A stretch of DNA of 64,000 nt from Heteronotia binoei (lineage: Eukaryota): positions 19,344,001 to 19,408,000 of the forward strand of contig NC_083242.1 in NCBI RefSeq assembly GCF_032191835.1. Direction: 5' to 3'. The position numbers and the translations under genes are program-made. Under the pieces are notes generated by a model. That model saw only the letters and a program-made list of their open reading frames with translations. It was not told where the DNA came from and made no database searches. Below, piece by piece: positions 2,351 to 55,829 of this stretch. The stretch's first letter is position 1, and every line of letters starts with the position of its first letter.

Positions 2351-5300
2351 GTTGGACTGGCTTCTGGGAGACCTATGTTGCATTCACACTACACTCAATA
2401 ATGCGTTTTGAACCCGGATTTTTACTGTGTAAGAATAGCAAAAATACAAATGTAAAATATATTATTTAGTGTAGTGTGAATGCTCCACCAGAGCCGAATC
2501 CCCACCTTTACATAGATTACCTGGGGCCAGTCATGCACCCTCCGCCTCACCACAGAGATAACAGGGAGGAGAGGGGGGATGCCAGCCTCCAAGTGGGACC
2601 TGGGGATCCCCTGGAACAGGGGCGGCTGAACTTGCTTAACATAAGAGCCACATGGAATAAATGTCAAACTCTTGAGAGCCACAAGGAAGGAAGGAAGGAA
2701 AGAAAATCCTCTAAGCTTGCTGGGCGACCTTGGGCCAGTCACTTTATCTCAAGCTAACCTACACTGCAGGATAGTGATTGGGAGAATGAAATGGGGAGGA
2801 GAGGGTGACGCTATCCACGGAGTTCCACAGAGAAGGAAAGCAGAGTACAAAGACCTAAAATAGAAATTTAAAAGTTACTTCAAAGAATCTTGCAGCAAGA
2901 ACCCAGCAGTATGATAGTGGGTAACATTTCAGTCCGGGGTCCATTTTCATGCAGAATTCTCCATTTCTGCAAGTTTTAAGTCATTGGCTTGAATCCAGCA
3001 GTCTTTTATCCTTCCTCTCTTTAAGTGACTCTTCCTCCAGTTGAAATTGGAGGAGGACTCCTTAAATTGGAGGAAGACTTAGAACCTGAGTCAAGGTGGG
3101 ATATATTATATAGCAGGGGTGGCCAGACTTCCTTAATTTAAGAGCCACATGGAATAAATGTCAGATGTTTGTGAGCCACAAGACAGGAAGAAAGAAAGAT
3201 GGATGGGGAGGGGGAAAGAAAGCAACTTCAAATGCATTTTCCGAGCTATCAGCTGGTTTGGCTTTAAGAAGTGATTTAAAGAGACAGATGCCTTCTGCAA
3301 GCCAGCTGATGGGGCGGTGGGGGCTTCAAGAGCCACACAATATGTATGAAAGAGCCACATGTGGCTCCCAAGCCACAGCTTGGCCACCCCTGCCCTGGAA
3401 TTACAGCTCATCTCCAGTCCAGACTACAGAGATCAGTTCCCCTGGAGAAAAATAACTGCTTTTGCAGACAAGCTCTATGGCACTGTGCTTCGCTGAGGTC
3501 CCTGTCCTCCCCAGGCTCCAGCCCCAGATCTCCAGCAGTTTCTCTCAAGTTTTCCTTGCTGTTTGTCATGGAACAAGGGGACTAGGGAGGGCTAGAGCTG
3601 CCAGTCAACAGTTTGGCCTCAGCAGCAGGTGCCCATCAACACCTTAGGCAAAAGTGGAGCTGCAACAGCTGGGAGGGTTGAGGAGAGGGATGGAAACGAT
3701 CTGGCAGCCCTACCCACCCATCTTCTGCTGGGGATCAGAGAGGACCCGGCAGCTCTAAAGAAAAGAACAATGTGAGCTGCTTCCAGGGAGAAAGACAGGG
3801 AGTAAATGAAATGTGTATGTAAAGTGCTAGCAAGTCGCAGCTTATGGTGACCCCAGCAAGGGGTTTTCAAGGCTAGTGAGAAGCGGAGTTGTTTTGCCCT
3901 TTGCTTTCCTCTGCAAAATCTCCCTTGGTGCAGGTCTCCCATCCAAGTACCGACCTTGCTTCGCTTCCAAGACCAGCCTGTACCATGCCACCTTCCTTCC
4001 CAATAAGTGAAATAAATATTTGTCCTGTTTTTTGAAGTAGTCGTAATTAGTGTTCCCTCTAAGCTGCAGAGTCTTGTGAGCAAAAATTTTTCTTTGTGAG
4101 CTACTGCATAAATTAGCTGCTCTGTGTGAGCTGGAGGCTAAGAATCTGTGAGCTAGCTCACACTAACTCAGCTTAGAGGGAATACTGGTCATAATGTAAT
4201 CTTTTATTCAACACCATTTCTCTCAAAATTTCCTTGCTGCTTGTTGTAAAATAAGGCGACTGGAGTTGCCAGTCAACTGCTTGGCCTCAGTAGCATGCGC
4301 CCATCAATTCCTTACGCAGAAGTGTAGCTGCAACAACCAGAAGGGTGGGGGAGAGGAATGGAAGCAAACAAGAAAGAAGCTTGCTTTGGTTACCGTTCGA
4401 ATAGCTGGATCCTCATGTCCTCTCTTTAGCACAGGCAAGGTGGTTAGGTGAAAGTTTGCAGCCCCCATCTGTTTTCAATACTCTGCAGTTTCCTTAAACG
4501 GCAGCAGTTATTACAACCACACATGGTGAAAGATTAGAATTAAGTTCTTTTGAGTGCTAATCTGGTGGAAAGGTGGGTTATGCATTTATTTTTAAAGTAG
4601 CATAGCTTGAAATTGAGTACCCATTGGCAAAGCTGAGCTGTCCTGTTCCCTGAAATGTTACAGCCAGCATTTGAGCATTGATGCTGAACACAAGCGCAAC
4701 ACTTAGAGATTTTAAAAAAGGCTTCCCTCCCCCTAATTTAAAAAAGCACAATTTTGGCCTAGGCAATTTTGGCCTTGGCCTAACTGATTTCCCCTCCTTG
4801 CAGCTAACAGTTCTAAGATCTGGTGACACTGGTAATGACCTACAAAAGTGTATGCTCTGTAAAGTCAACATAAGCTTGTGGTGAAATCCTAAACAGTTAC
4901 AACTTTCTAAACACACTGAAGAAGAAAGTCAGTGCAACTGTTCAGGATTACACAGACAAAGTACATCTGGTTTTTCTTACTTTTTTCTACTTTATACTTC
5001 TGCTATTTTCTGCTTATATAGCAGTGCTCCTCTGGTCTTCCATCCCTGGATCGATCAGATCAATTTCAGTATCATTACTATGGAATCTGTGGTCTGAGGT
5101 TCTTCTTTGCCACTACTGGGCCTGTTAATTTCTTGATACTGACCTGCGTGTCACTCATGCTGTCACAAAGCTGGATGAATTCTGAAGGGATTTATGTACC
5201 CAATAGGACTATAAAAATCTAGCAATCTTCATCTGTTTATTATTGCAGATCACCTTTTAAAATCAGCTTCTGTCATAACAAACCATGATAGAAATCTCAT

Positions 5301-8300
5301 TCTCTTTCTCTAATGAATGTTTTCTCCATGCCAGGACCAAGAAGCGGATGGGATTTGCAATGCATGCATGCCACTAACAAGTTTTGTAGCACTGGAACAG
5401 CCTTTGAAAGCATCAACAAACCAGTTATCGACCGCATAATCCGAGTGGATCATGCAGGAGAATATGGGGCAAACCGCATATATGCAGGCCAGATGGCAGT
5501 GTTAGGTCGGACGTCGGTTGGACCAGTGATCCAGGTTAGTATCTCTAGCCTGTATGTTCTTTGCACTTTTTAAAGTCAGCTTTGCTATTATCCAAGCTTG
5601 ATAGAAGCTAACTTTCCGTGTTGCTTTATCACAATGTGAAACCATGGTTTAGTTCAACTAATCAGGGCTTTTCATGAGCAGGAAAGCACAGAAACACAAG
5701 TTCCGGCTGGCTTCGTGCCAGGGAGTGTGACCTAATGTGCAAATGAGTTCCCGCTGGGCCTTTTCTACCTAAAAGCCCTGTGTGAAACAATGGTAATATC
5801 AGGGGGTGTGCCTTGATATGCAAATGAGTTCCTGCTGGGCTTTTTCTACCAAAAAAAGCCCTGCAACTAACTATAGATAAATGCAACTGTCAAAATGCTT
5901 CCCACTCCACTAAGTATGGTCAGTTAGTGTTTACCAAACTAGGTTTTGAAACCAAGGGTTGAAGTTGGTTTACTAAGGTCTTAAGAGAGCCAGTTTGGTG
6001 TAGTGGTTAAGTGTGCGGACTCTTATCTGGGAGAACCGGGTTTGATTCCCCACTCCTCCACTTGCAGCTGCTGGAATGGCCTTGGGTCAGCCATAGCTCT
6101 CTTATCTGGGAGAACCGGGTTTGATTCACCACTCCTCCACTTGCAGCTGCTGGAATGGCCTTGGGTCAGCCAAAGCGCTCTTATCTGGGAGAACTGGATT
6201 TGATTCCCCACTCCTCCATGTGCACCTGCTGGAATGGCATTGGGTTAGCCATAGCTCTGGCAGAGGTTGTCCTTGAAAGGGCAGCTGCTGTGAGAGCCCT
6301 CTCAGCCCCACCGCTCTCACAAGGTGTCTGTTGTGGGGGAGGAAGGTAAAGGATATTGTAGGCCATTCTGAGACTCTGTCCTTGAAAGGGCAGCTGCTGT
6401 GAGAGCCCTCTCAGCCCCACCCACCTCACAGGGTGTCTATTGTGGGGGAGGAAGGTAAAGGAGATTGTGAGCCGCTCTGAGACTCTGTCCTTGAAAGGGC
6501 AGCTGCTGTGAGAGCCCTCTCAGTCCCATCCACCTCACAGGGTGTCTGTTGTGGGGGGAGAAGATATAGGAGATTGTAAGCCGCTCTGAGTCTCTGATTC
6601 AGAGAGAAGGGCAAGGTATAAATCTTCAGTCTTCTTCTTCAGGTAAAAATCAGGAAAGGGATGGAATACAACAAAACTCAGAAAAAATACAGAGAGTAAA
6701 TCCAATAAGGTGTAATAGCAATTCAGTAGGATGGAGTATGTGTAAGTTAATAAATAATAGTGGAATGTTTCAGTAAAGAAGAAGATGATGATATTGGATT
6801 TATATCCTGCCCTATACTCTGAATCTCAGAGTCTCAGAGCAGTCACAGTCTCCTTTACCTCCCCTCCCTGACAACAGACACCCTGTGAGGTGGGTGGGAC
6901 TGAGAGAGCTCTTACAGCAGGTGCCCTTTCAAGGACAACTCCTACGAGAAGCTCTGGCTGATCCAAAGCCATTTCAGCAGCTGCAAGTAGAAGAAGAAGA
7001 CGGCATTGGATTTATATCCCACCCTCTACTCCGAAGAGTCTCAGAGTGGCTCACAATCTCCTTTACATTCCTCCCCCACAACAGACACCATGTGAGGTGG
7101 GTGGGGCTGAGATGGTTCTCACAGCATCTGCCCTTTCAAGGACAACCTCTGCCACAGCTATGGCTGACCCAAGGCGATTCCAGCAGCTGCAAGCAGAGGA
7201 GTGGGGAATCAAGCCTGGTTCTCCCAGATAAAAATCCACACACTTAATCACTAGGCCAAACTGGCTCTCTAAAGAAGCAGGCACAGGTGCAAGAATAGCT
7301 TTTCAGAATCTTTCCAACATGTTTTACAGACAAAGTGGGGAAAGAAAACTGTGTACCCTGCCTTGAGCTCATCGGAAGAAAGGGTAGAGTAAAAATGCTC
7401 TTGCCTGTGAGCTCCCAGGGGAATCAAAGCAGTTAACTGAACACTCGGATCAAACGTCCAGCTAAAAGCCACAGAATGGTTTTGTCACTGATGGAAGAGG
7501 GTATCGCTGACCCTTGTGTACCTTTTCCCAACCTCCAGCCAATCTTACCCCCTGCATATATATTTTTTTAAACACAGCAAATGTGGAATCAGGAAAAAGA
7601 ACATTTGAAAAAGTTCAACGATTTAATGGTCTCGTATCGAGTCCGGCCCACGGTTCTGTTGCCTTTCTGGAATGTTGCGGGGTTTGTGCTAGGTGAGGCT
7701 TGAATTTTTTAAAAAGCGTTTTCCTTTTAAAATTCAAACATGTGGACGAATGAGATGGGGGCACCCCATCTGATAGGAATGTCTTCACAACAGGCGCGGG
7801 GACAGCCTTGCTCGGCAAAAAGGCCGCCATGGCTTGCACGGTGGCAGTGGAGGAGAGTATCTCTCATCACTACAATAACCAGATCCGAACGCTGATGGAA
7901 GAAGATCCGGAAAAGTACAAAGAATTATTAGAGGTGCCTCTTCACGGTGCTTGAAAGTTGCTTAAAATTAGGAAGGGACGGGAAAGGGTAGGCCGCCTTT
8001 TCTAGCCCAAGAACTGGGTGCGAAAATCTGCCATATACTTGAGAAGATGTTAGTGTTTTTGCAAAAACAGTGGGGGTTGGTGCAGTTGGAGTGAGGTGGA
8101 TATTTGGCCAGACATACATAGAGCCAGGGCTTTTTTGGTAACAGGAACTCCTTTGCATACCTCTCTGATGTAGCCAATCCTCCAAGAGCTTACAGGGCTC
8201 TTATTCCAGGGCCTACTGTAAGCTCCAGGAGGACTGGCTACATCAGGGGTGTGTGGCCTAATATGCCAAGGAGTTCCTGCTACAAAAAAGCCTTTTCTTA

Positions 8301-20249: not shown

Positions 20250-20460
20250 CTATGGAGCCAGTGTAGTTGTTAGACTAGAATGTGAGAGACTTGGATTTGA
20301 ATCCCCACTCTGCCTTGGAAGCTTGCTGGGTGACCTTGGGCCAGTCACTTTATCTCAGGCTAGCCTACACTGCAGGGTGGTGGTGGGGAGCATGAAATGG
20401 GGAGGAGAGGGTGACGCTGTCCACGGAGTTCCACAGGGAAGGAAAGCAGAGTACAAAGAC
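20250..20460 (+). mobile_element. Old MIR/CORE-like SINE
   Basis: tRNA-like head, GTGACCTTGGGCCAGTCAC core. Its 3' part is included in the captured segment. Confidence 0.65.
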
Positions 20461-20703
20461 CTAAAATAGAAATTTAAAAGTTACTTCAAAGAATCTTGCA
20501 GCAAGAGCCCAGCAATTTGATAATGGGCAACATTTCAGTCTGAGCTCCATTTTCATGCAGAATTCTCTATTTCTGCAAGTTTAAGTCACTGGCTTGAATC
20601 CAACCATCTTCTAAGTGACTCTTCCTCCAGTTGAAGTTGGAGGAGGACTCCTAAAACTGGAGGAAGACTTCGAACCTGAGTCGAGATAGGGTATATTATA
20701 TAG

Positions 20704-21462
20704 CAGGGGTGGCCAAACTTCCTTAAGAGCCACATGCAATAAATGTCAGATGTTTGTGAGCTATAAGACAGGAAGGAAAGAAGCAAGGAAGGAAAATAGA
20801 TGGGGAGAGGGAGGTAGAAAGAAAGCAACTTTAAATACATTCTCCAAGCCACTGGCTGGCTTGGCTTGGAGAAGTGATTTAAAGAGACAAATTCTCCAAG
20901 CCAGCTGACAGAGCAGTGGAGGCTTGGAGAGCCAGTTTGGTGTAGTGGTTAAGTGTGCGGACTCTTATCTGAGAGAACCGGGTTTGATTCCCCACTCCTC
21001 CACTTGCACCTGCTGGAATGGCCTTGGGTCACCCATAGCTCTGGCAGAGGTTGTCCTTGAAAGAGCAGCTGCTGAGAGCCCTCTCAGCCCCACCCACCTC
21101 AAAGGGTGTCTGTTGTGGGGGAGGAAAGTAAAGGAGATTTTGAGCCACTCTGAGGTTGTCCTTGAAAGGGCAGCTGCTGTGAGAGCCCTCTCAGCCCCAC
21201 CCACCTCACAGGGTGTCTGTTGTGGGGGAGGAAGGGAAAGGAGATTGTAGGCCGCTCTGAGACTGTCCTTGAAAGGGCAGCTGCTGTGAGAGCCCTCTCC
21301 AGCCCCACCCACCTCAGAGGATGTCTGTTGTGGTGAGGGGGGAGAAGATAAAGGAAATTGTGAGCTTCTCTGAGATTCGTAGTGGAGGGCAGGATATAAA
21401 TCCAATATCTTCTTCTTCTTTGAGAGCCACACAATGTACGATCCACCGTTTGGCCACTCCTG
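20704..21462 (+). mobile_element. Non-autonomous hAT element (CAGGGGTGGCCAAAC TIR, internal GGAA tract) interrupted by a SINE
   Basis: Degenerate TSD TTATATAG / TCGTATAG. Other copies of the family: 1-157, 17453-17820, 18559-19087 (TSD ATCTAACA), 31987-32471, 32706-33063 (TSD CTCTAACC), 33625-33695, 54635-55010, 55197-55464. Confidence 0.85.
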
Positions 21463-21628: not shown

Positions 21629-21936
21629 ATGCTGCTGCTGCTACAGGTTTCCAAGTCACTGCTAGTGGTCCTGCTGCTGCTGCTGCTGCTGCTGGGGCAA
21701 GCGTTGTCTCACAGCAAGCGCTTCCCCAAACTTAATGCAACGACTCCCGCTCGGAAACAAAGGGGTCGTCCTTCAGTTGCCATGGTGGAAGATGTGCACC
21801 AAATAGCGTCTCCTAGTGGGGAAAGTGCAGCGCCACCAGCAAGGAGCACTTTGGCCCATTCTAAACCCTCACGTGACATGAAACTCGCCTTTCTAAAGAA
21901 CCCCAAAGTCACTTGCAACGATGGGACAACCGCTGG
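21629..21936 (+). CDS. NOTUM2: notum2 coding exon 1 (signal peptide to TCNDGTTA)
   Basis: [27 protein letters not shown] leader; donor GG|gtaaga, phase 2. Confidence 0.9.
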
Positions 21937-24900
21937 GTAAGACACCTTCCCAAATGTCTTCATATCTGATAGCCAAGGGCTGACTCGTGCACAGATTTAA
22001 AAATCCGCATGGTGGGGCCAGCCACAATCACGACGTAAAGTCCTGCAAACTTCCACATTCACAGAGAAACCCAGTTCATGGCAAAAGAATTTGGACATTA
22101 CTCCAAAATGCTGAGACATCTGCACGTATACAGTCACAGAACCTTTATTGACATAACAACAACATATCGAATCAAGGAAGCAGGGGGAAAGGTGGTTCAT
22201 TAAACATTCTAAATAGACTTCTCCTCCTGTAAGCACAGTAAAGGAAGTTTGCCACCACTTTGATGGTTTCAGCCTTATTTGAGGCTAGTAAACTCACTAT
22301 CTTGCTTTCATAGCTATCGCAGGCGTTGTTCTTGAAAGGGCAGCTGCTGTGAGAGCCCTCTCAGCCCCACCCACCTCACAGTGTCAGGCAATAAGGTTTC
22401 AAAGCAACCAGACCTTGAATTGATACAGAGTTAGGCTTTATTTGATAATCCATATGCACTAGAATGAAGAAATTGGGACTGATACCATGTAACAGTGCAA
22501 CGCATACTTAAGAGGGCTACATCAAAGGTTTCTAAACAAAAGCCACAATTTTCAACATTGCTGAGCTGAGGTGTGAAGGTTCACATGGGCCCTCTCTCTT
22601 ATCTTATTCCTACGGTTTGTCTTCCTGGGATGGCCAAGAGGCTCGTCCCTGGAGGCACTTTATCTTCAAAGGGGAATTCTTGCCTTTGTTAGTATTAGGG
22701 GGAGAGAGAGGTTCACATTAAGCACTGGCAACTATCTACAACATTCTACTTGGATAGGCAAGGTCTTTCTCATGGTTAGTAACAGCGGTTCAATATGGCT
22801 GCTATTAAGCTAAGCATTTTATTTCAGGAATAGTTACATTGCCTGACATACTGCCCCCCCTAAGCTCTTGCTCGGGGTTTTTCTGGGTGCAGTAGGTAAA
22901 ATCTTTTGAGAAGAAGGGGGACTCGCAGATCTGATGATTTCACCCATTCATCACAGCTAGGTGGAGAGTATTTCCACCGTATTAGATAGTACAGAACCCC
23001 CCTCTTCAGTCTGGCATCCAGCACCTCCTGCACCTCATGATGACTCTGACCCCTCACTTGAATAGGTTTGGGCTCTGGAGGGCAGGGGTGCCAAGATGTA
23101 ATTCCAGGATCTTTTCGAAGAAGGCTGCAATGGAAAACAGGGTGAATTTTACTAAACAATTTAGGCAGTTCCAGTTCTACTGTCACTTTGTTTATTACTC
23201 GTTTTATTTTGAATGGCCCCAGATATTTGTAAGCCAGTTTCCTGCAAGTCTGTGGTAGTGGCAAGTTCTTGGTGGATAGGAAAACTGTCTCTCCCACTTT
23301 GAAATCCCATTCGGGTGAATGCTTCTTATCGAAGTGGGCTTTATAGTCTCTCTTGGCCGTTTCCAAGTTCTCCTGAATAATGACCCATCCTTTTTTTAGT
23401 GTCTCCCACCATTGCTCGCAAGAGGTGCGGGGAGAGGTTTCTTTACTGCTGGGCAGCAAGGGGAAAGGTTTCCCTTCATAATCATTCACAATTTGAAATG
23501 GGGTCACTTTAGTGGAACTATGCCAGCTGTTATTGTATCCAGACTCAGCAAATGGGAGTAGCTGCACTCAGTTCGATGGCTGGTAATTTACATAGCACCG
23601 AAGGCACTGTTCCAGAAGGGCGTCCACACATTCCGTCTGTCTGTGGGTGGTAGGCAGAACTCAGCCCCTGCTCTATGCATGTCGGTCTGCAAAACTCCCG
23701 CCAGAAGTTGGCAACGAACTGTGGCCCGCGGTCACTAATGACTTTGTCAGGGAATGAGTGTAATTTAACAATATGCTGGAAAAATAAGTACGCCAATTTC
23801 TTTGCTGTCGAGAGTTGCTTGCATCGAATAAAGTGGGCTTGTTTTGAAAAGGTGTCCACTACCACTAAAATCACTGTTTTTCCCTGGGACACTTCTGCTA
23901 TGAAGTCCATCGACACTACTGACCAGGGCCAATTGGCCGTGGGGGTGGGCTGAAGGAGTCCCGGCGCCCCCCCCCCCCCGTTACTTCGCCATGATGCAAA
24001 TAGGGCAGGTGGCCACAAATTCTGAGATGTCTTTTTTCATGTGGGGCCACCAAAATTGTCTATTGATCAAATGCAACGTTTTTACGTAACCAAAATGGCC
24101 TGCCAGTTTGTTACAATGGCAGTGCTGTAAAACTTCTTTGCAGAGGGTTTTGGGAATGTACAACCTCCCCTCATAGTACCAAACCCCGCCCCCCTCTCCT
24201 TTCACAATCCCTTCCGGCCTTTCTGCTCCTTCAGCCTCGGTCTCCTCAATCAGCTTACTGCCCCCCCACGGCTCTGGAGCTTTTGTTCTTTTCCCCGATT
24301 GTGTCATCACTGCTCCCGCTACCGCAGAGGGGGGAATGATGGAGTCTATCACCTCCTCCCTCTGGCTTTCGTGCTGAGGCAATCGGGAGAGGGCGTCAGC
24401 CATAAAGTTCTTCGACCCCGGGATGTATTTGAGGGTGAAGTCGAACTTAGCAAAGAATCTGGCCCACCGAATTTGTTTTGCAGTCAGCTTTCAGCAGCCG
24501 GTGAGCACTTCTAGGTTTTTATGATCGGCCCAGATCTCGAACGGGACACCCGCCCCTTCTAACCAAGACCGCCAGGTCTTGAGAGCGAAAGTCACTGCAA
24601 ATGCCTCTTTGTCCCAGACTGACCAGTTACGCTGGTCTTGCAAATATTTTTTAGAGATATAGGCGCAGGGTCTCAACCTCTCCTACTCATCCCTCTGCAT
24701 TAATATGGCTCCTACGGCCACGTCGGAGGCGTCACACTGGACCACGAAGTCCTTAAGTTCGTCTGGGTGGGCAAGGACCGGCTCGCTTGTGAACAAGCGC
24801 ATAAGTTTGTCAAAGGCCTCTTGGCACCGTGGCGACCAGGGTAATTTGGCCCCGGGTCTCTTAGCTTCCGGCCCCTTTCCCTTAGTCTTAAGTAGGTCTG

Positions 24901-27900
24901 TTAGGGGCAACATCACCTGGGCAAACCCCTGAATGAACCCCCTGTAAAAAATCACGAATCCGAGAAATGATTGTAACTGTCTATGTGTCCTCGGGGGTTC
25001 CCAGTCTAGCACTGCTTGTATTTTGGCTGGGTCCATCGCCAACCCCTTCCCAGAGACCCGGAATCCCAGGTAGTCAAGTTCCGTTTGGTGGAATTTGCAT
25101 TTGGACAATTTTGCGTATAGCTTGTGCTCATACAGGGTGAAGAGCACTTTCTTCACCAGTTTTACATGGGAGGGTAGATCTTTCGAATAGATAATGATGT
25201 CATCCAGATACACCACCACCCCCTTGTACAGGTATTCTCTTAGCACTTCATTGATAAATTTCATGAACACTCCCGGGGCCCCTTGAAGTCCGAAGGGCAT
25301 CACCAAATATTCGAACTGTCCCATCGGCGTGTTAAACGCCATCTTCCACTCATCCCCCTCCTTGATCCTTACTCGAAAGTAGGCGTGAACTTGGTGAAGA
25401 TGGACCCTTCCTACACCGTGCTTAGTAAGTCTCTGATTAGGGGGATGGGGTAGGTGTTGGACATAGAAATCCCTTTTATCCCACTAAAGTCTGTGCGAAG
25501 CCTAAGGCTTCCGTCCTTCTTTTTCCGGAAGAGGACAGGCGCGGTGTGGGGCACGGTGGCCGGCCTAATGAAACCCCTTTTTAAGTTCTTGTCAATGAAC
25601 TTTTGTAATTCTGCCTTTTCCGCCCACCACATGGAGTACAGTTTGGCCTTTGGTAGTTCTTGGCCCGGGATCAGTTTGATAGCGCAGTCGGTACTGCGAT
25701 GGGGGGACAGTTCATTTGCTTCCTCCTCGCTAAACACTTTGCGTAAGTCCCGGTACTCCCTTGGGATTGATCAGACCTCTTCTACCGACATGCACATCTT
25801 TTCGTTCTTAGGGGGTGGATTTGGCCCGCATTTTTCTAGCCAGTGGTAGTGCGTGTACTGTTTGTCGGTGCAATCTGTGGTCTGTGCTCCCCACTGTATA
25901 TCCAGCTGGTGCCCTAACATCACATCAAAGGAGGAAGAAGGGGCAATGACAAAAACTTCTACCTCCCAGTGTTTGTCTATCCCCACCGGCAGGCCCTGAG
26001 TCTCTTCTACGCATGGCTCCCCTTGCGTTACGGACCCGTCCATCTGCTTGAACTGGATCGGGCGAGGTAGGGGGGTTCGAGACAGTCAAGGGCGTCCACC
26101 AGTTGTGGGGTGATAATCTCCCGCGTGCACCCGGAGTCAATTAGGGCTTGGGCGTGCATAAATCGCTTGAGTTTTGGGTTCAATAAAGTCAAGGGGACAA
26201 AGAATAGGGCCCCAGTTATTCTCACCCATAATGGCGCCGTTAGATCCATGACCTGCCTCCCGGCACCCCTCAGTGCAGGTTGCTCTCGTTTCCCGCCGGC
26301 TCGGGCTTCCATGACTCCTCGCTTAGGTCGTCCACAATTATAGTATCCTCGTCAAGCACCATCGAGGTGGCGGTGCTGCCCCGACTGGACTCCTTGGACT
26401 TCCCTGGCGTCTTCTTTGGTCTCACCGCCATCGGCTTCGGGGTAAGGGGGTGGGCTTGAGGTTTCTCAGGGCAGTTTGCCACCAGGTGCCCCAGGTTGCC
26501 GCATCAGAAGCACTTTCGACCCATGGTGGCTTTTGGGGTCTCTCCTTGGGCTGGCGTTTTCTTTGCTTCGGTCTTTGTGCCCGACCGAGCCTCACGTCAC
26601 CCCTTTCCCCCTTGCTGCTGTTGCAGGGCTATGCGCTTCATGTTTGTTTCAACTTCTCCTGCCAGCTGCATCCACCCTGCCCACGTGGTGGGGTGGGCTT
26701 GGTCCGTTCCTTCAATTTCCTTCAACCCATAGGAACATAGCCTATCAAAGAATGGTATTTTTTTGAAGGAAGCAGATTAAAATGGGCCAACATAAACTAC
26801 CTTCGAATATGGGGATCAATCAAACAAGACAAATACTCTGTATGTGAACCATTAAAAGGAATCCCCCATTGCATGGCAGAGCAGTGCCCAGAAGCAAGAC
26901 TTCTAAGGTCTTTAATCTCCATGTCAATTAATCTCTATTTGATCACATATACGGACTGTAGGGAGGGAGAGGGGGATGTCTTGCGCCTGGCATTGAAGTA
27001 GGGGCAGGCCTCCGATTCAGCAGGAGCTCACAAGAGCGCAGCTCCTGAACCTTTCTGAGGATTCCCCCACCTTGTCCATTGAACAGTAGGTGCAGCTGCA
27101 TAACAATGCCTGGATGAGCTCCACCACCTATTTTTCTACAAAATGACCCCTGAATAGAGGTGCCAGCATCAAGAAGAGCTGGAGGTGGTGGTGGGGGGGA
27201 GCGACAGCAAGGGTGAAGAAGAACAGAGCTAGAGGGGCATGCATGAGAATTTGCTGTCCGTCTTTGTGAGTCCCCATTTGAAGAATTTGGAATTAGTGTT
27301 GGAAGAGAAGAAATGTATTCAATACTCCCTCCTCTTTCGTTGCAGATACTACATAAGGGAGCAGAGAAATAGCAAGAGGTGGATTGTTTTCTTAGAAGGT
27401 AAGTAAGAGGAAAAATCGCCTCTTACAACAATGAACTGAAGCTGTCTATTTTTTGAATCTCTCATCGATCAAGTATGAGCCTGATATTTTCTTCAGGGAC
27501 TCTTGCTCTGTGAGTCTGCACTTTCACAGGCTGGGATGAGGAGGTGAGTGCAGGGCCTTTTTTGTGGTGGCACCCAAGCGTCAGAGTGGCTTCCCTATAG
27601 AAGCTCCTCAGCGCCGAATTTATAGGCTTTCAGATACCAAGCAAAGTTGCTTTTATTCTCCAAGATTTTTCAGATTCCACAACCTCCCCCACCCCCCCGC
27701 ACTTTCATTACTTGTTTGTCCTGTTTTTTTAATCTCTGCCTTGAAGACCCTGACTGGATGGAAAGGCTGCATAAAAATGTTTTAAATAACATTAAATGAA
27801 ATAAACAGTTCATTAAATTGATTTTCCCTTGTTTTATATTGGCTGCTTTAGGATTTCAAGAACTTACTAAATTTATATCTGGTGATATTTTGCATTCCTT

Positions 27901-28192
27901 CTCTAGTTTTGCTGCTGTTACACATTTTATTCCGTTATGTTCTTGTTTGCAACTTGTTTGCAACTTGTTTTATCACTTTATTTTGTTTTATAAAGAATTC
28001 TCATGGCTGTAAACTGTCTCATCAGTATTTCTATGGAGATGCTGGGGTAAAAGGAAGTACTTCTTCACCCAAAGGGTGATTAACATGTGGAATTCACTGC
28101 CACAGGAGGTGGTGGCATCCACAAGCATAGCCACCTTCAAGAAGGGGTTAGATAAAAATATGGAGCAGAGGTCCATCAGTGGCTATTAGCCA

Positions 28193-28256
<64 letters not shown>

Positions 28257-31200
28257 TTGGCCGCTGTGTGACACAGAATGTTGGACTGGATGGGCCATTG
28301 GCCTGATCTAACATGGCTTCTCTTATGTTCTTATGGTATAGTTTAAATACATCACAGAGAGAGAGATGGATTGTGTTTGCTGGCATCAAAACATACACAA
28401 CGACTACCTTAGTATCTCCTGGAGGAATTGGAAGGATTGATGTATGGGTTATAGTTATATCTGTCAGGCTGTCAGACTGAGACCTTCTTCCTTGAGCACA
28501 TCTGACTGTGCCAGACCTTTTCTTCCAATAGTTCAGAGTGTCTTTTTAGCATCCCAAGAGTCCTGCAAGGTAAGCTTGGCCTGGCTGTAGAGATAGAGAC
28601 TTGCTCAAAATCATTTAAGGAACTTAATCTCTAGTGGGGTATTTCACAGTCTGGGTTTCCCACATCGAAATGCAGCATTTTGCTCCTTGTCTTATTCCGG
28701 CACACTCTGTGAGCCCGAGAACCTGAGAACCAGTTTGGTGTAGTGGTTAAGTGCGCGACCTTTTATCTGGGAGAACAGGGTTTGATTCCCCACTTCTCCA
28801 CTTGCAGCTGCTGGAATGGTCTTGGGTCAGCCATAGCTTTCATAAGAGTTATCCTTGAAAGGGCAGCTGCTGTAAAAAGCTCTCTCAGCCCCACCTACCT
28901 CACAGGGTGTCTGTTGTGGGGGAGGGGGAGAAAGTAGAAGAGATTGTGACCACTCTGAGACTCTGAGATTCAGAGTATAGGGCAAGATATAAATCCAATC
29001 ATCTTCTCAGCAGAATACCAACCTGTTTCATGAGTTCCGCAGGCTGGGCTGGACTGGGCAGCACACGGGACAGCTCCAAGCACATACAGTCAGGAGCAAT
29101 GGAAGTCCCTTTCAGGCCTCTCATGAGTGCCCAAACGTAGCTCCTGGTTGCAAGCTAGTAAGAATATAGTTGGATGACCAGACCAGAAGGTTCCTCTGTG
29201 TGTCCTGCAGGGGGCTCTTTCCCCAAACCAGGCCCAACGCTGGCTGTGGGGGTGTCCCATTGACACACAGCCAAAGCAGTCTCTTCTGTGCAAAAGCCTG
29301 GAATTCCTTTTTCAGGCCATGACTTATGAACCGATGAACAAAGGGCACCAAATTTTCCTCTTATATTTGCAACAGGGTTCTGTCTGGCCCAAGTCTTGAC
29401 AAACTTAGGGATCCAAAAAGAGTATTCAGTTCAAATTGGGGCTTTTTTTTTTTTTTAGCAGAAATTCCTTTTTATACTAAGCCACACTCCCCTGATGTAG
29501 CCAATCCTCCAAGACCTCACAGGGCTCTTCTTACAGGGCCTACTGTAAGCTCCAGGAGGATTGGCTACATCAGAGGTGTGTGGCCTAATATGCAAAGGAG
29601 TTCCTTCTATAAAAAAAGCTCTGGTTATAATGCAATGTTTTAAGTTGTATACAAGGTGGCACCTGATGCTGAAACTTTTTTCTCATATTTTCATGTCTAG
29701 CTCAGCTCTTTGCTGGAAGCAATGTCCCTGGTTCTTATATACATTGTTGGTGGGAATACCCTGTGATTGAATCTTTTTGATGCCGGCTTCACTGTTTGAA
29801 ATTATATATCATGAGGATAGATTTACCGTTTCTCTTAGAATCATTTTTAATTGACATATTGGCCAGATTTACAGCTGCGGGAAGAAAACTACAGATTTAT
29901 ACCTCGCCCTTCTCTTTGAATCAGAGACTCAGAGCAGCTTACAATTTCCTTTATCTTCTTCCCCCACAACAGACACCCTGTGAGGTAGGTGGGGCTGAGA
30001 GAGCTCCCCCAGAAGCTGCCCTTTCAAGGACAACTCTGCAAGAGCTATGGCTAGCCCAAGACCATTCAAGCAGGTGCAAGTGGAGGAGTGGGGAATCAAA
30101 CCTGGTTCTCCCAAATAACAGTCCATGCACTTAACCATTACACCAAACCATTTGTGTCCATATTGCAACCACCTAGCTAACAGTGGCAGCATTTTGGGAA
30201 AACCCTAAAGCTCCTAGCATAGAGCTTTGGTACAAAAATGTCTCAGAGCATGTTATTATGGCTAAGTTAGCGGATCACATGACATAACTTTCTAATGCTA
30301 ATTATCACACTAAATTTTCCACTATCTGGTACCCGATTTTGCAACGCCTTTCAGAAAATGATAACAATCCCTTGTAGAGCTATTTATAAGGATTTTTTTT
30401 ACCATTTTAAATGTTTGGTTGTTAAAATGTTATATTTATGTATTTGTGGAATGTTTTTGCCCCTGTACTTCATTTCTGAATTTTTAAAAAAACAAACTTA
30501 GGGATCCAAGGAGAGAAATAGACACCCCCTCTGAAATGCAGCCTCAAGTGTGAGTTTTAAGGCAATTGCTTGCTTTGTAGTCAATGCCCTCTTTCCCATT
30601 CTTTGCCAGGTGGCTGGTGCTGCTATAACACCGAAACGTGTGAGAGCAGACACAAGAATAGTCGTCGCTTGACAAGTTCATTGGAGTGGCCACAAACAAG
30701 AAAAGGTACTGAGATTTGAGAGATAACACTAGCATAAGAGCTGTTGGACGATCATCCATCACTGTCTTCTTTTTCTGCTTGTTGTCCTAGGGACAGGCAT
30801 TTTGTCAGCTCACATGGAGGAGAACCCTTACTGGTGGAGTGCAAATGCAGTGTAAGATGTTTCTTCCATTCCCTAAATGTTCTGAGACCAAAGGCAGGGC
30901 ACCTTAAAGACTGCATTCTTCTTCAGCAGCCTATCTGCATACAGAGATCTTCTGTAAATCTTCATTTCCATATCCCTGCACCATCAGAGATCCTGGGCTA
31001 TATGAGGCAGGGCCTTCTTAGTGATGGCATTAGGACTATGGAGTTTCAAAGGCAGGGATACCCATTCAGGCCTTGTGATTTTCATGGTGGTGATGTTTCT
31101 TTCCTGACCTAGCTGGCTATTTTGTTGTAGATTATAGTCCTGTTTTTATATTGTATATTCTGTGTAGGGTAAAAAAGCAAGATATGTCTTTTCTTTTCTT

Positions 31201-34200
31201 TTTAATGCAGATATCCACAGATTTTCTGCTGGGGGAGGGAGCAAAAGCACCACACAAATGTCATGGCAATTGTTGCTTTCTGTTTACTCAGTACAATGTA
31301 GCTTATAATACTTAATTGTTTTAATTGCATGATTTTGCTGCTTCTCTCCAGCTTTGTGCCTTATTGCTCTAGTGACCTTTGGATTGGAACTCTGCCCAAA
31401 TCACGACAAGGTATACGCCGATTCCCAGTACCTTCTGGCCCCTTTTCATCTCAGGTCATTTTCAACCTTGCCTTATTTCTTCTAGTGCCTTATACTTTCA
31501 TGGGCTCTTTGATTATCCAGGAAGTCATAAAAGACCTTGTCCCCAAAGGAATTAAGCAAGCTAAAGGACTCTTGCTTGCTGGCTCAAGGTAAGCCGAAAG
31601 ACCCTGAGAACTGCGAGGGCTAAATCTATTTGATATAAGGGTATGATTCCACTTTACTAATGTTAGAGTGAAGATTTCAGGGCTTTTTGGTAGCAGGAAC
31701 TCCTTTGCATCTTAGGCCACACACTCCTGCTGTAGCCAATCCTCCAATAGCTTCAGGGCTTTTCGTACAGGGCCTATTGTAAGATCTTGGAGGACTGGCT
31801 ACATCAGGGGTGTGTGGCCTAAGATGCAAAGGTGTTCCTGCTACAAAAAAAGCCCTAACTTTTGTTGAATAGAAGAGCATCAGCTTTGTATGCAGAAGAG
31901 CCCAGATTTGATCCCTGTATTCAAAAGGATGTCCAGTTGGCAGAACCTGAGATGTTGGGATGCTGCCGCCAGCCAGTCCAGTAAACCAGGGGTGGCCAAG
32001 CTGCAGCTCGGGAGCCACATGTGGCTCTTTCATACATATTGTGTGGCTCTCCAAACCCCTCCCCCAATCAGCTGGCTTGGAGAAGGCATTTCTCTCTATA
32101 AATTACATCTCCAAGCCAAGCCAGCAGGCAGCTTGGAGAATGAATTTAAAGTTAAAGTTGCTTTCTTTCCACCNNNNNNNNNNNNNNNNNNNNNNNNNNN
32201 NNNNNNNNNNNNNNNNNNNNNNNNNNNNNNNNNNNNNNNNNNNNNNNNNNNNNNNNNNNNNNNNNNNNNNNNNNNNNNNNNNNNNNNNNNNNNNNNNNNN
32301 NNNNNNNNNNNNNNNNNNNNNNNNNNNNNNNNNNNNNNNNNNNNNNNNNNNNNNNNNNNNNNNNNNNNNNNNNNNNNNNNNNNNNNNNNNNNNNNNNNNN
32401 NNNNNNNCTTGTCTTGTGTCTCTCAAACATCTGACATTTATTCTTATGTTGAACAAGTTTGACCACCCCTGTAGTTTACTGACACTGCATATTTATATGC
32501 AATCCTGTGGTTTATTTATTTATTGCATTTATACCCCACAGTTCTCACCAAAGCGGGGACCCAAAGCAACTTATATCACTCCATTTCATCCTCACAACAA
32601 CTCTGTGAAGTAGGTTAGGCTGAGGGAGTGTGACCAGCCCAAGGTCACCACGTCAGCTTCAATGGCAAAATGAGGATTCGAACCTGGGACTCCAATGCTC
32701 TAACCCAAGGGTGGCCAAACTTGCTTAACGTAAGAGCCACATAGAATAAATGTNNNNNNNNNNNNNNNNNNNNNNNNNNNNNNNNNNNNNNNNNNNNNNN
32801 NNNNNNNNNNNNNNNNNNNNNNNNNNNNNNNNNNNNNNNNNNNNNNNNNNNNNNNNNNNNNNNNNNNNNNNNNNNNNNNNNNNNNNNNNNNNNAGAAAAC
32901 AACTTTAAATGCATTCTCCAGGCTATCAGCTGGCTTGGCTTTAAGAAAAAAGAGACAGATGCCTTCTGCAAGCCAGCTGATGGGGCAGTGGGGGCTTCAA
33001 GAGCCACACAATATGTATGAAAGAGCCACATGTGGCTCCCAAGCCACAGTTTGGCCACCCCTGCTCTAACCACTACACCAGACTTGGAAACTTTCTCTAT
33101 CAAATGCCCCTGGGTTGAAATAGGGCCTTGCTCCAAAGCAGGGGCAGGACAGTCTCAGTCCCCAAATTAAAATACAAAGAAAACAATCTTGACTGCAGTG
33201 AAGGATCTTTCTCTCTCGTTACAGAAAGTTTCAGGGTGTGTGCTTGTACGGGGAGGGAGGGGTGTTGAACCAGCTATTTGTGCAGTGTGAATGGGGGAGG
33301 AAGCTTAAAATGAATCAAGACCCCCAACATTCAGCACTGAACACTTAGGGCTGCATCTGACATTTAACTTCCATGGAGGTCATTTGAAGTGGGGGTTCAC
33401 ACGATTGAATGCTGTTCCATTCAGAAAGCATTCCCTGCATATAGAAAACTAGTATGTCAGGGAGAAAACCAGACCAGACCCATTCCTAGTCAGAAAACAC
33501 AATATTGAGCAAGATGGGCCATGTTGATAATACTGATATAATGGTTTCAGTGGTCCAAGCACTTAATATATGTGATCTTTCTACAATTCTTATGACAACA
33601 CTGAAGGGTAAGCAATATTTTTCCCCGTCTTGCGGCTCTCAAACATCTGATGTTATGTCTTGTGGCTCCTCCATTAAGCAAGTTTGGCCACCCCGGTATA
33701 GCCCGTCTTTTAAATAACATATTCAACTCCAGCATAAAAGAACAAAATATAATAATGGTCCTGAAAGCACAGTCAGAAGAAACAAAATTAATAGCAAATC
33801 AAGCAGGTGTTACCAAATATATTTTACCAAATTACTTTACCAAATGCCTTCTGGAAGAAGAGCAAAATTCGAGTTGAGAAGAACAGGATTCAGTATCTGA
33901 TGAAGGGGCTTTGATTCTCAAAATCTTATATCCTGGAAATCTTACTGTTTTTTAAGGTGCTTGACGTTGTTTCTGGACTCAAACGTTGCTCGTCTACTGC
34001 AGTCCAACATGACGATACCCCTGAAAATAGCTTCTGGGAGAAAACTGTATTTGCCCACTGTGTCAAGTCCCCAGCTAAAGGGGCAGAGGAAAATCCTCTG
34101 GAGGAAGAAGGGAGTGCCATGCTTTTGGGTGCAACAGCAGAAAAGACTCTGTCCCATGTAGTCTTCCCTTGACATTGAAGAGTTGGGGGAAGATCTCAAA

Positions 34201-54600: not shown

Positions 54601-54731
54601 ACTGGAAATGAAAGTGGGGCTATGCCAAGCTGAGAGGCTGTGGGGCCAAACTTGCTTAACATAAAAGGCACACAAAATAGAAGCCAGATGTTTGAGAACT
54701 GCAAGACATGAATGTCAGATGTTTAAGAACA

Positions 54732-54797
54732 GGAAGGAAGGAAGGAAGGAAGGAAGGAAGGAAGGAAGGAAGGAAGGAAGGAAGGAAGGAAGGAAGG
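54732..54797 (+). repeat. (GGAA)n microsatellite expanded inside a hAT element
   Basis: About 16 uninterrupted GGAA units. Confidence 0.95.
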
Positions 54798-55829
54798 AAG
54801 GAAGGAAGGAAGGAAGGACAAATAGATGGAGAGGGAGAGAAGAGAAAGGCAGAAAGAAAGCAACTTTAACTTTAAATGCATTCTTCAAGTCCTCAGGTGA
54901 TTTGACTTGGAGAAGTGATTTAAAGAGAGAAATGCCTTCTCCAAGCCAGCCAACTACATATTTGAGAAATCCTGAAGGGATGCTTCAGGGCAGGGGTGGC
55001 CAAACAGGACAATTGATATATCTGGCACCCAGTAGCCTCTGGCTAAGTTGCTACTCAGGCACTGGCCCACCAATAAATTTCCCTGGGTGTCAAATGCCCA
55101 ATGCCACCCCCCTTGTTTGTGACGTGAAACCCAGGTCACCCAAAGCCTGAATCAGCAGTTAAGTAGACCCAGGCGGGCAGCTGTGTTGGTCTGAAGCAGG
55201 AGTGGCCACACTTGCTTAACATAAGAGCAACATAGACCAGATGTCAGATGTTTGAAAGTCGCAAGGAAGGAAGGATGGAAGATAGGGGAGGGAGGAGGTA
55301 GAAAGAAAACAACTTTAAATGCATTCTCCAAGCCGTTGGAGAAGCGATTTAAAGAGACAAATGAGTTCTCCAAGCCAGCCAATGGGTTGGCGGAGGTCTC
55401 AAGAGCCACACAATATGTGTGAAAGAACCACATGCCGCTCCTGAGCCACAGTTTGGCCACCCTGGCTTGAAGCAAGTTAGACTCCAGCAGCACCTTTAAG
55501 ACCAACAAAGTTAAATTATGGGGACAGCTTTCGTGTGCAAGCAAACGTCTTTCGATAGAAGTGTTTTAAACAGGAAGATGTTGGTTCTTGGTGGAAAAGA
55601 ACAAACAGGCAAATTAACTAAAACCCATTGCAACTTTTTAATTTAAATGCAGGGGCTTGCTTCCTATGGGGGGAGGGGAAAGAGCTAAAATCAAGTGCAA
55701 TTTTACCCCTGATTGACTGACTTCCTTTCCCACGTTGCTCTCCCCCCTTTCCCTCCCACCCAGTATGGAAAGGCCTCTGAGCCAGTTCCCCAAACGTTCC
55801 TCCCCTCCTTCTCCCATGCCGGGCTCTGG

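What the first reader, a model, noticed from the sequence alone, without database searches (positions are those of the whole stretch)
2617..3392. Pack-type hAT element in COQ7 intron 1 that captured ~400 bp from upstream of notum2, 17.6 kb away
Seen: the block runs [hAT left end, 2617-~2700] + [2713-3113] + [complete hAT copy, 3114-3392] and is flanked by a perfect 8-bp TSD, CCCTGGAA. The middle part is a ~90% identical copy of 20319-20703 (including a perfect 69-nt run, 2832-2900 = 20438-20506). It comprises the tail of an old MIR-like SINE plus ~250 bp of non-repeat-looking DNA, and it keeps the same junction into the hAT (TTATATAG|CAGGGGTGGCC). Direction is readable. At 20.3 kb the SINE head is intact and that hAT has its own TSD (TTATATAG/TCGTATAG), so it is the donor; the COQ7 copy lacks the SINE head and is bounded by a different TSD. 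Known: Pack-type capture of host DNA by DNA transposons is well described in plants and rarely documented in vertebrates. Inference: the block arose by capture during transposition, or by template-switch gap repair between two family members. It moved possibly regulatory sequence from the notum2 upstream region to ~550 bp downstream of COQ7 exon 1.
Basis: partly seen in the sequence, partly recalled or inferred. Interest (0 to 1): 0.82.

Follow-up and report, generated by a model that had tools for sequence, protein, structure and literature searches.

The report
Repair patch inside a hAT transposon
A small hAT-type transposon in the first intron of COQ7 carries about 490 bases copied from beside a sister copy 17.6 kb away, most likely pasted in during repair of a break; this kind of capture is already documented in animals, and this copy never spread.

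Summary
An exact 8-bp target-site duplication (CCCTGGAA) brackets 2617-3392. Inside, 2713-3113 is a ~92% copy of 20319-20703, and genome-wide this segment has only these two full-length copies.

One detail is wrong, and it decides the mechanism. The "complete hAT copy" at 3114-3392 is a chimera:
- Positions 1-59 come from the donor's hAT. They carry three shared derived bases that occur in 0-2 of 49 family members.
- Positions above ~100 come from a different subfamily. None of 39 derived sites is shared with the donor.
- The switch lies in the element's internal (GGAA)n microsatellite, where the left fragment (2617-2703) also stops.

The simplest history has three steps:
1. A resident 279-bp hAT MITE broke at its microsatellite.
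2. One end primed on the paralogous MITE 17.6 kb downstream and copied leftwards out of it into ~385 bp of its flank.
3. The new strand was end-joined back to the resident.

That is a single-copy "Pack-TIR" made by gap filling, a kind catalogued in animals (370 cases, 208 of them hAT; PMC8277862). It is not a mobilised Pack family.

The new point is that the parental DNA adjoins a same-family element, a class that survey excluded by design.

Other first-reader notes of this scan report hAT captures elsewhere in this genome. No evidence of regulatory function was found, and no orthologous locus or read support could be obtained.

The parts
2609..2616 (.). Left copy of the 8-bp target-site duplication CCCTGGAA
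   Evidence: The host-repeat paralogs have this site only once.
2617..2703 (+). Left part of the resident hAT-type MITE (family positions 1 to ~86). It ends inside the internal (GGAA)n microsatellite.
   Evidence: It lacks the donor's derived bases C18 and T59.
2704..2712 (+). Left junction: 6-9 unassigned bases (A-run plus TCCTCT) between the resident microsatellite and the start of donor homology. They may be short templated filler from donor 20301-20312.
   Evidence: alignment. The assignment is ambiguous.
2713..2875 (+). Copied tail of a MIR-like, tRNA-derived SINE (donor 20319-20481). The SINE head is absent here.
   Evidence: 93.9% to the donor against 72-87% to other SINE copies.
2876..3113 (+). 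Copied low-copy DNA (donor ~20482-20703). Its last 8 bases are the donor hAT's left TSD, TTATATAG.
   Evidence: 91.4% identity and only two full copies genome-wide.
3114..3172 (+). Donor-derived 5' end of a hAT MITE (family positions 1-59)
   Evidence: It ranks first of 50 to the donor hAT, with shared derived C18 (0/49), G38 (2/49) and T59 (2/49).
3173..3201 (+). Switch zone from donor-derived to resident sequence (family positions 60 to ~88), in and beside the (GGAA)n microsatellite
3202..3392 (+). Right part of the resident MITE, from a subfamily other than the donor's
   Evidence: It is 91-93% to L006/L007/L008; the donor ranks last and shares 0 of 39 derived sites.
3393..3400 (.). Right copy of the TSD CCCTGGAA
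20256..20481 (+). Complete SINE at the donor locus. The copied tract starts in its middle, at 20319.
   Evidence: family hits span query positions 31-190 across the breakpoint.
20319..20703 (+). Parental (donor) tract, 926-1310 bp upstream of the Notum-type start codon
20704..21462 (+). Donor hAT MITE, made of 20704-~20930 and 21419-21462 and split by a later SINE insertion. Its own TSD is TTATATAG / TCGTATAG.
5427..5534 (+). First COQ7-domain exon (Pfam PF03232 positions 3-39). The composite lies in the intron upstream of it.
21629..21940 (+). Open frame with a signal-peptide-like start, the likely first exon of a Notum-type gene
   Evidence: The downstream exon frame 31302-31589 hits NOTUM structures at E = 3e-9.

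Best explanation
An ordinary 279-bp non-autonomous hAT element (MITE) inserted into a host repeat in the first intron of COQ7 and made the CCCTGGAA duplication. Later this resident copy broke, or a replication fork stalled, at its internal (GGAA)n microsatellite. The right-hand end paired with a paralogous MITE 17.6 kb downstream on the same chromosome in the same orientation. That pairing used the microsatellite and the ~80% similar neighbouring sequence. DNA synthesis then ran leftwards through the donor's first ~60-88 bases and out into ~385-410 bases of its left flank: the donor's TSD, low-copy DNA and half a SINE. The new strand was released and joined to the left-hand end by end joining, leaving 6-9 odd bases. 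The product looks like a Pack-type element with both termini, one TSD and host DNA inside. It arose by one-sided, homology-primed gap filling and has stayed single-copy. Shown: the anatomy, the copy number, the direction of copying and the chimeric make-up. Inferred: the break, the order of the steps, and formation in place.
For: - **One insertion with a true TSD:**
- **Only two genomic copies of the captured segment:**
- **Chimeric 3114-3392:**
  - Family positions 1-60 rank first of 50 to the donor (94-97%).
  - Those positions carry 3 shared derived states seen in 0-2 of 49 copies.
  - Positions above 100 share 0 of 39 derived sites with the donor, and the donor ranks last.
  - The two segments differ in match rate at Fisher p = 0.003.
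- **Coinciding breakpoints:** the left fragment stops at family position ~86 and the switch zone is 60-88. A single break point explains both, and the hAT reading stays in register at a normal 279-bp length.
- **Unstable microsatellite:** it has ~33 units in L014 and is expanded in the window's own copy at 54738-54821.
- **Real and old duplication:** identity is uniform at ~93% and K2P is 0.075 over 2713-3199.
- **Match to a described class:** the features fit gap-filled single-copy Pack-TIRs, namely cis location, internal breakpoints, a small gap between breakpoints and a short odd junction (PMC8277862).
Against: - No orthologous locus could be examined, so formation in place is inferred only from single-copy status.
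- The left fragment is 13-17% from every family member. It cannot be assigned to the same subfamily as the right part.
- Pairing at ~80% identity is normally disfavoured. The perfect match may have been only the short microsatellite run.
- A break-repair origin and a replication template-switch origin give the same product and cannot be told apart.
- No reads of this species were available to confirm the assembly.
Confidence: 0.7

Rival explanations
1. The same template-switch event built the composite at another site, possibly closer to the donor. The composite then transposed by cut-and-paste into the COQ7 intron and made the CCCTGGAA duplication on arrival. This is the 'FoSTeST'-like route in PMC8277862.
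For: - Both termini are present and the TSD is exact.
- hAT elements are known to hop locally (established knowledge).
- The event is about as old as the resident's subfamily: ~7.5% against ~8% pairwise. Transposase may therefore still have been active.
Against: - There is only one copy genome-wide.
- In PMC8277862, multicopy transposed Pack-TIRs lay far from their parents, and single-copy cis cases had orthologous plain TEs in 94% of primate cases.
- This route needs one more step than formation in place.
Confidence: 0.17
2. A block made of the donor flank plus the donor's complete hAT was captured behind a second left end (Pack-type capture or end-bypass transduction) and transposed as a unit.
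For: - The overall layout is left end, host DNA, full-length hAT, with one TSD.
- The donor's TSD-hAT junction is preserved.
Against: - The 3' two thirds of 3114-3392 are not donor-derived.
- At the donor there is no hAT left end at 20319. An intact SINE runs through that point.
- The donor was not excised.
- Rescuing the model needs a later gene conversion whose edge happens to fall where the left fragment ends.
Confidence: 0.04
3. The duplication is an assembly artefact, or an ordinary interspersed repeat.
For: No reads of this species could be laid on the locus. About 160 bp of the tract is a SINE tail.
Against: - The two copies differ by 33 substitutions and 9 indel events. Mis-joined duplicates are near-identical.
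- The exact TSD and the host-repeat empty-site pattern fit a biological insertion.
- The non-SINE part has only two genomic copies.
Confidence: 0.03

Closest known systems
Single-copy Pack-TIRs of animals made by transposition-independent gap filling (Tan et al. 2021, Nat Commun, PMC8277862)
   Same: - It is a TIR element, hAT being the commonest host, with non-TE DNA inside and one TSD.
- It is single-copy.
- The parent lies in cis on the same chromosome.
- The breakpoints are internal and close together in the TE, at a likely fragile site.
- One junction is short and odd.
- The captured size (~400 bp) is of the same order as their median of 224 bp.
   Different: - The parental DNA directly adjoins another copy of the same TE family.
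- One junction runs through tens of bases of that paralogous TE rather than 1-36 bp of microhomology.
- Their pipeline discarded parents with TEs within 100 bp, so this sub-class is not in their catalogue.
- The parent distance is 17.6 kb, just beyond their <15 kb 'proximal' bin.
- Identity is ~92%, so the event is older than most of their 'young' set.
One-sided invasion / SDSA repair of a double-strand break, with the other end closed by end joining (Puchta 1998, as cited in PMC9299229). Also P-element-induced gap repair from ectopic templates (Gloor et al. 1991, cited in PMC8277862).
   Same: One junction is homologous and the other is not. Sequence beyond the homology is copied from an ectopic template, and the template lies in cis.
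   Different: Those are experimental systems with induced breaks. Here the event is a natural, fixed, old one inferred from sequence only, and the cause of the break is unknown.
Pack-MULE / Pack-TYPE elements of plants (PMC8903248) and multicopy Pack-hAT of frogs (PMC8277862)
   Same: Host DNA lies between the two termini of a DNA transposon, and both termini are retained.
   Different: Those families are mobilised and multicopy with distinct TSDs, and often carry gene fragments. This one is single-copy, carries non-coding DNA and half a SINE, and shows no sign of having moved.
Capture of flanking DNA by a P element, the end-bypass model (Tsubota and Huong 1991, cited in PMC8277862)
   Same: The DNA captured is what flanks a transposon copy.
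   Different: End bypass moves the donor element itself together with its flank. Here only the donor's first ~60-88 bases were copied, and the donor stayed in place.

Membership tests
hAT superfamily, non-autonomous (MITE) | 8-bp target-site duplication | tested here: met
   All 16 family copies with both termini intact have 8-bp flanks matching at 6-8 of 8 positions. The composite's is 8/8 and the donor's is 6/8.
hAT superfamily, non-autonomous (MITE) | TSD consensus nTnnnnAn (NTCTAGAN in lizard hATs) and short TIRs starting CAG | tested here: met
   The family TSD consensus is nTcTAGAn. The TIR is CAGGGGTGGCCAAACTT. Anolis hAT tables list CAGGGGTCCCCAAACT with NTCTAGAN (PMC3014272).
hAT superfamily, non-autonomous (MITE) | Link to an autonomous hAT transposase-encoding master | not tested
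   No autonomous partner was sought. The element is ~279 bp with no coding capacity, and the first look found over 6,400 candidate copies.
Pack-TIR (non-TE sequence flanked by the parts of one TIR element) | Both ends of one TIR element flank non-TE DNA, with an identifiable parental copy | tested here: met
   About 240 bp is low-copy non-TE DNA; the rest of the filler is a SINE tail and hAT sequence.
Pack-TIR, gap-filling (transposition-independent) subclass | Single copy, parent in cis, internal and closely spaced breakpoints in the TE | tested here: met
   There is a single copy with the parent 17,606 bp away on the same strand. The breakpoints fall at family positions ~86 and 60-88 of 279.
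Pack-TIR, gap-filling (transposition-independent) subclass | A plain TE without the filler at the orthologous locus of an outgroup | not testable with these tools
   The four public runs found hold only the repeat families, not the unique parts of this locus.
Mobilised Pack-type family (Pack-MULE-like) | Several copies of the composite with different TSDs | tested here: not met
   The whole-genome search with 2850-3110 returns only the composite and its parent.
End-bypass transduction | The donor element moves whole with its flank, so the right element should be donor-derived throughout | tested here: not met
   Positions above 100 of 3114-3392 share 0 of 39 derived sites with the donor.

The most novel reading that the evidence does not exclude
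Homology to a paralogous copy of the same transposon family chooses the repair template, so DNA flanking other copies is what preferentially gets captured. The published animal survey removed TE-adjacent parents by design. This route could therefore be a common, uncounted source of Pack-type elements, at least in this MITE-rich genome, where the scan has many other unverified hAT-capture notes. A weaker version is that the copied Notum-upstream DNA acts on COQ7 expression.
Probability: 0.15. Interest if true: 0.5.

Novelty: new member of a known kind. Interest (0 to 1): 0.28.

Why it matters
The locus is a clean natural record of how a DNA transposon can acquire host DNA. Donor, recipient, both junctions and the direction of copying are all still readable. 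It shows that one junction can run through a paralogous element rather than a few bases of microhomology.

It also flags a blind spot. Surveys that discard parental copies next to TEs will miss this class. Beyond that it is an old, neutral-looking, single-copy rearrangement in an intron, with no evidence of function.

Tried and rejected
- **Reads.** The only runs found (two organisms, word share 0.06-0.07) cover the host repeat, the SINE core and the MITE. They do not cover the unique parts (2770-3050, 2441-2487, 3569-3662). The many 'joints' 2616>3418 are other copies of the host repeat, not an empty allele. This gave no check of the assembly and no orthologous site.
- **Pfam PAE search (PF03283) of the genome.** It did not flag the window's Notum-type gene. 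A PDB search with exon 1 alone was also blank. A later exon frame did hit NOTUM structures.
- **Weak hits L003/L004 to 3011-3105.** They show 72% similarity to a palindromic CTTCCTCCA...TGGAGGAAG stretch and no adjoining hAT in the same arrangement, so the segment is not part of a longer repeat.
- **Subfamily of the left fragment.** The attempt to assign 2617-2703 to the same subfamily as 3202-3392 was inconclusive: 87 bp, 13-17% from every copy.
- **Extending the tract left of 2713.** AATC...CTCT resembles donor 20301-20312, but the match is too short to decide.
- **N-masked stretches.** 32174-32407 and 32754-32893 were left alone, and locus L021, which covers that place, was excluded from all alignments.

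Full report
**1. What is there**

The block 2617-3392 is bracketed by an exact 8-bp repeat, CCCTGGAA, at 2609-2616 and 3393-3400. The block sits in a copy of an abundant host repeat. In 19 other genomic copies of that repeat, the sequence ...GGGATCCCCTGGAATTACAGCTC... runs straight through with a single 8-mer. The block is therefore one insertion with a genuine target-site duplication.

Its ends belong to a ~279-bp non-autonomous element:
- The first look found more than 6,400 candidate copies.
- The termini are CAGGGGTGGCCAAACTT...CCACCCCTG.
- All 16 copies with intact termini have 8-bp duplications. Their consensus is nTcTAGAn.
- This matches the hAT families tabulated for Anolis (PMC3014272).

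**2. The duplicated tract**

- Over 2713-3199 against 20319-20790 there are 466 aligned bases with 26 transitions, 7 transversions and 9 indel events. Identity is 92.9% and K2P is 0.075.
- The first ~160 bases are the tail of a tRNA-derived, MIR-like SINE. The family's other copies run continuously across the point that corresponds to 20319. The donor therefore holds a whole SINE and the composite only its tail.
- The remaining ~240 bases are low-copy. A whole-genome search with 2850-3110 returns only the composite, the donor and two weak partial matches of no consequence.
- The donor hAT has its own duplication, TTATATAG/TCGTATAG. The composite carries only the left one.
- With 33 substitutions between the copies, an assembly duplicate is very unlikely.

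**3. The decisive detail: 3114-3392 is a chimera**

I aligned it with the donor hAT and 49 other family copies.

| Family positions | Relation to the donor hAT |
|---|---|
| 1-60 | Closest of all 50 copies, 94-97% identity |
| 1-60 | Three shared derived bases: C18 in 0/49, G38 in 2/49, T59 in 2/49 other copies |
| above 100 | 0 of 39 derived sites shared; the donor ranks last; nearest relatives are L006/L007/L008 at 91-93% |

The match rates of the two segments differ at Fisher p = 0.003. The change-over lies between family positions 60 and ~88 (window 3173-3201), in and beside the element's internal (GGAA)n run.

The left fragment 2617-2703 stops at the same place, position ~86. That microsatellite is unstable in the family. 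It has ~33 units in L014 and is expanded in another copy in this window at 54738-54821.

**4. Mechanism**

One break point in a resident element accounts for everything.
- The resident MITE is 2617-2703 plus ~3202-3392. It already sat at CCCTGGAA.
- It broke, or a fork stalled, in its microsatellite.
- The right-hand end paired with the paralogous MITE 17.6 kb downstream, which lies in the same orientation.
- Synthesis ran leftwards through donor positions ~88 to 1 and on into the flank as far as 20319.
- The strand was released and joined to the left-hand end, leaving 6-9 unassigned bases at 2704-2712. These may be tiny templated pieces from 20301-20312.
- The homologous junction is seamless and in register, because 3114-3392 has a normal 279-bp length. 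A homology-independent insertion would achieve that only by luck.

This is one-sided invasion and SDSA with end joining at the other side (concept as cited in PMC9299229). It is also the gap-filling route proposed for animal Pack-TIRs (PMC8277862).

The anatomy, copy number, direction and chimerism are shown. The break, the order of events and formation in place are inferred. A replication template switch would give the same product.

**5. Rivals**

Whole-block capture with the donor's complete hAT, followed by transposition, is contradicted by the chimerism. It is also contradicted by the intact SINE at the donor in place of a second hAT end.
- **End-bypass transduction.** It fails for the same reasons.
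- **Composite built elsewhere and then moved here.** This cannot be excluded without an outgroup. It needs an extra step, and the element is single-copy.

**6. Comparison with what is known**

Tan et al. 2021 found 370 Pack-TIRs in 100 animal genomes, 208 of them on hAT elements. Their findings were:
- Almost all are single-copy.
- Parents tend to lie in cis.
- Breakpoints are internal and separated by a median 4.6% of the TE.
- Junctions have short microhomology.
- The origin is interpreted as transposition-independent gap filling at fragile sites.

This locus fits that description point by point.

The difference is that the parental DNA abuts a same-family TE and one junction passes through it. 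Their pipeline removed parents with TEs within 100 bp, so this sub-class is absent from their counts.

The scan's own notes list other unverified hAT-capture candidates in this genome. One follow-up reached the same 'documented kind' verdict. I did not test those.

**7. Context and function**

- COQ7-domain exons lie at 5427-5534, 7572-7697 and 7784-7933 on the + strand.
- A GC- and CpG-rich region with two possible start codons lies at 2041-2165. The 2041 frame can splice in phase to the 5387 acceptor. The composite is thus in the first intron, ~450-550 bp past exon 1.
- The gene after the donor is Notum-type. The frame 31302-31589 hits NOTUM structures at E = 3e-9, and a signal-peptide-like ORF starts at 21629.
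- The parental tract lies 926-1310 bp upstream of that start.
- Nothing suggests constraint. Identity is 93.9% in the SINE tail, 91.4% in the low-copy part (with most of the indels) and 96.3% in the hAT part.

**8. Limits**

- No reads of this species and no orthologous locus were available. The four runs found share only repeats.
- The left fragment is too short and too diverged to tie to the right part by subfamily.
- Dating is rough.

**Verdict**

The mechanism is largely readable and is of a known kind. Interest is modest.

Noticed in passing
L028:1501-1937 (G000:C4:166517978-166518311, minus strand): Another family copy is a composite of positions ~3-150 followed directly by ~10-279. It is bracketed by an exact 8-bp duplication, CCATAGAC, and the internal joint falls at a shared CTGGC. 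It looks like the same kind of template switch, one that stopped before leaving the donor element.
   Followed up: partly
L014:1501-1906 (G000:C2:37175983-37176388) and window 54644-54950: The MITE's internal (GGAA)n run is expanded to about 33 units in L014. It is a long run at 54738-54821 in a copy within this window. This marks an unstable, possibly fragile spot in the family.
   Followed up: partly
window 20931-21418: The SINE that split the donor hAT contains three tandem repeats of its ~60-70-bp core (...CCCTCTCAGCCCCACCCACCTCA..GGGTGTCTGTTGTGG...). This is an internally triplicated SINE copy.
   Followed up: no
L003 and L004 (G000:C279:174165-177277; G000:C6:23189062-23192174): These two 3.1-kb stretches on different contigs are 99.8% identical. 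They are probably an unplaced haplotig or a very recent duplication.
   Followed up: no
window 2535-2628, 2676-2769, 3099-3192 and 3334-3568, in runs X1-X4: The host repeat, the SINE core and the hAT MITE are all abundant in contigs of two other coded organisms. These repeat families therefore predate the split from those species.
   Followed up: no
window 21629-31589: The genome-wide Pfam PAE (PF03283) search missed this Notum-type gene, although its exons are readable (for example 27233-27403, 30561-30716, 31302-31589). Exon-by-exon family searches can miss short exons.
   Followed up: partly
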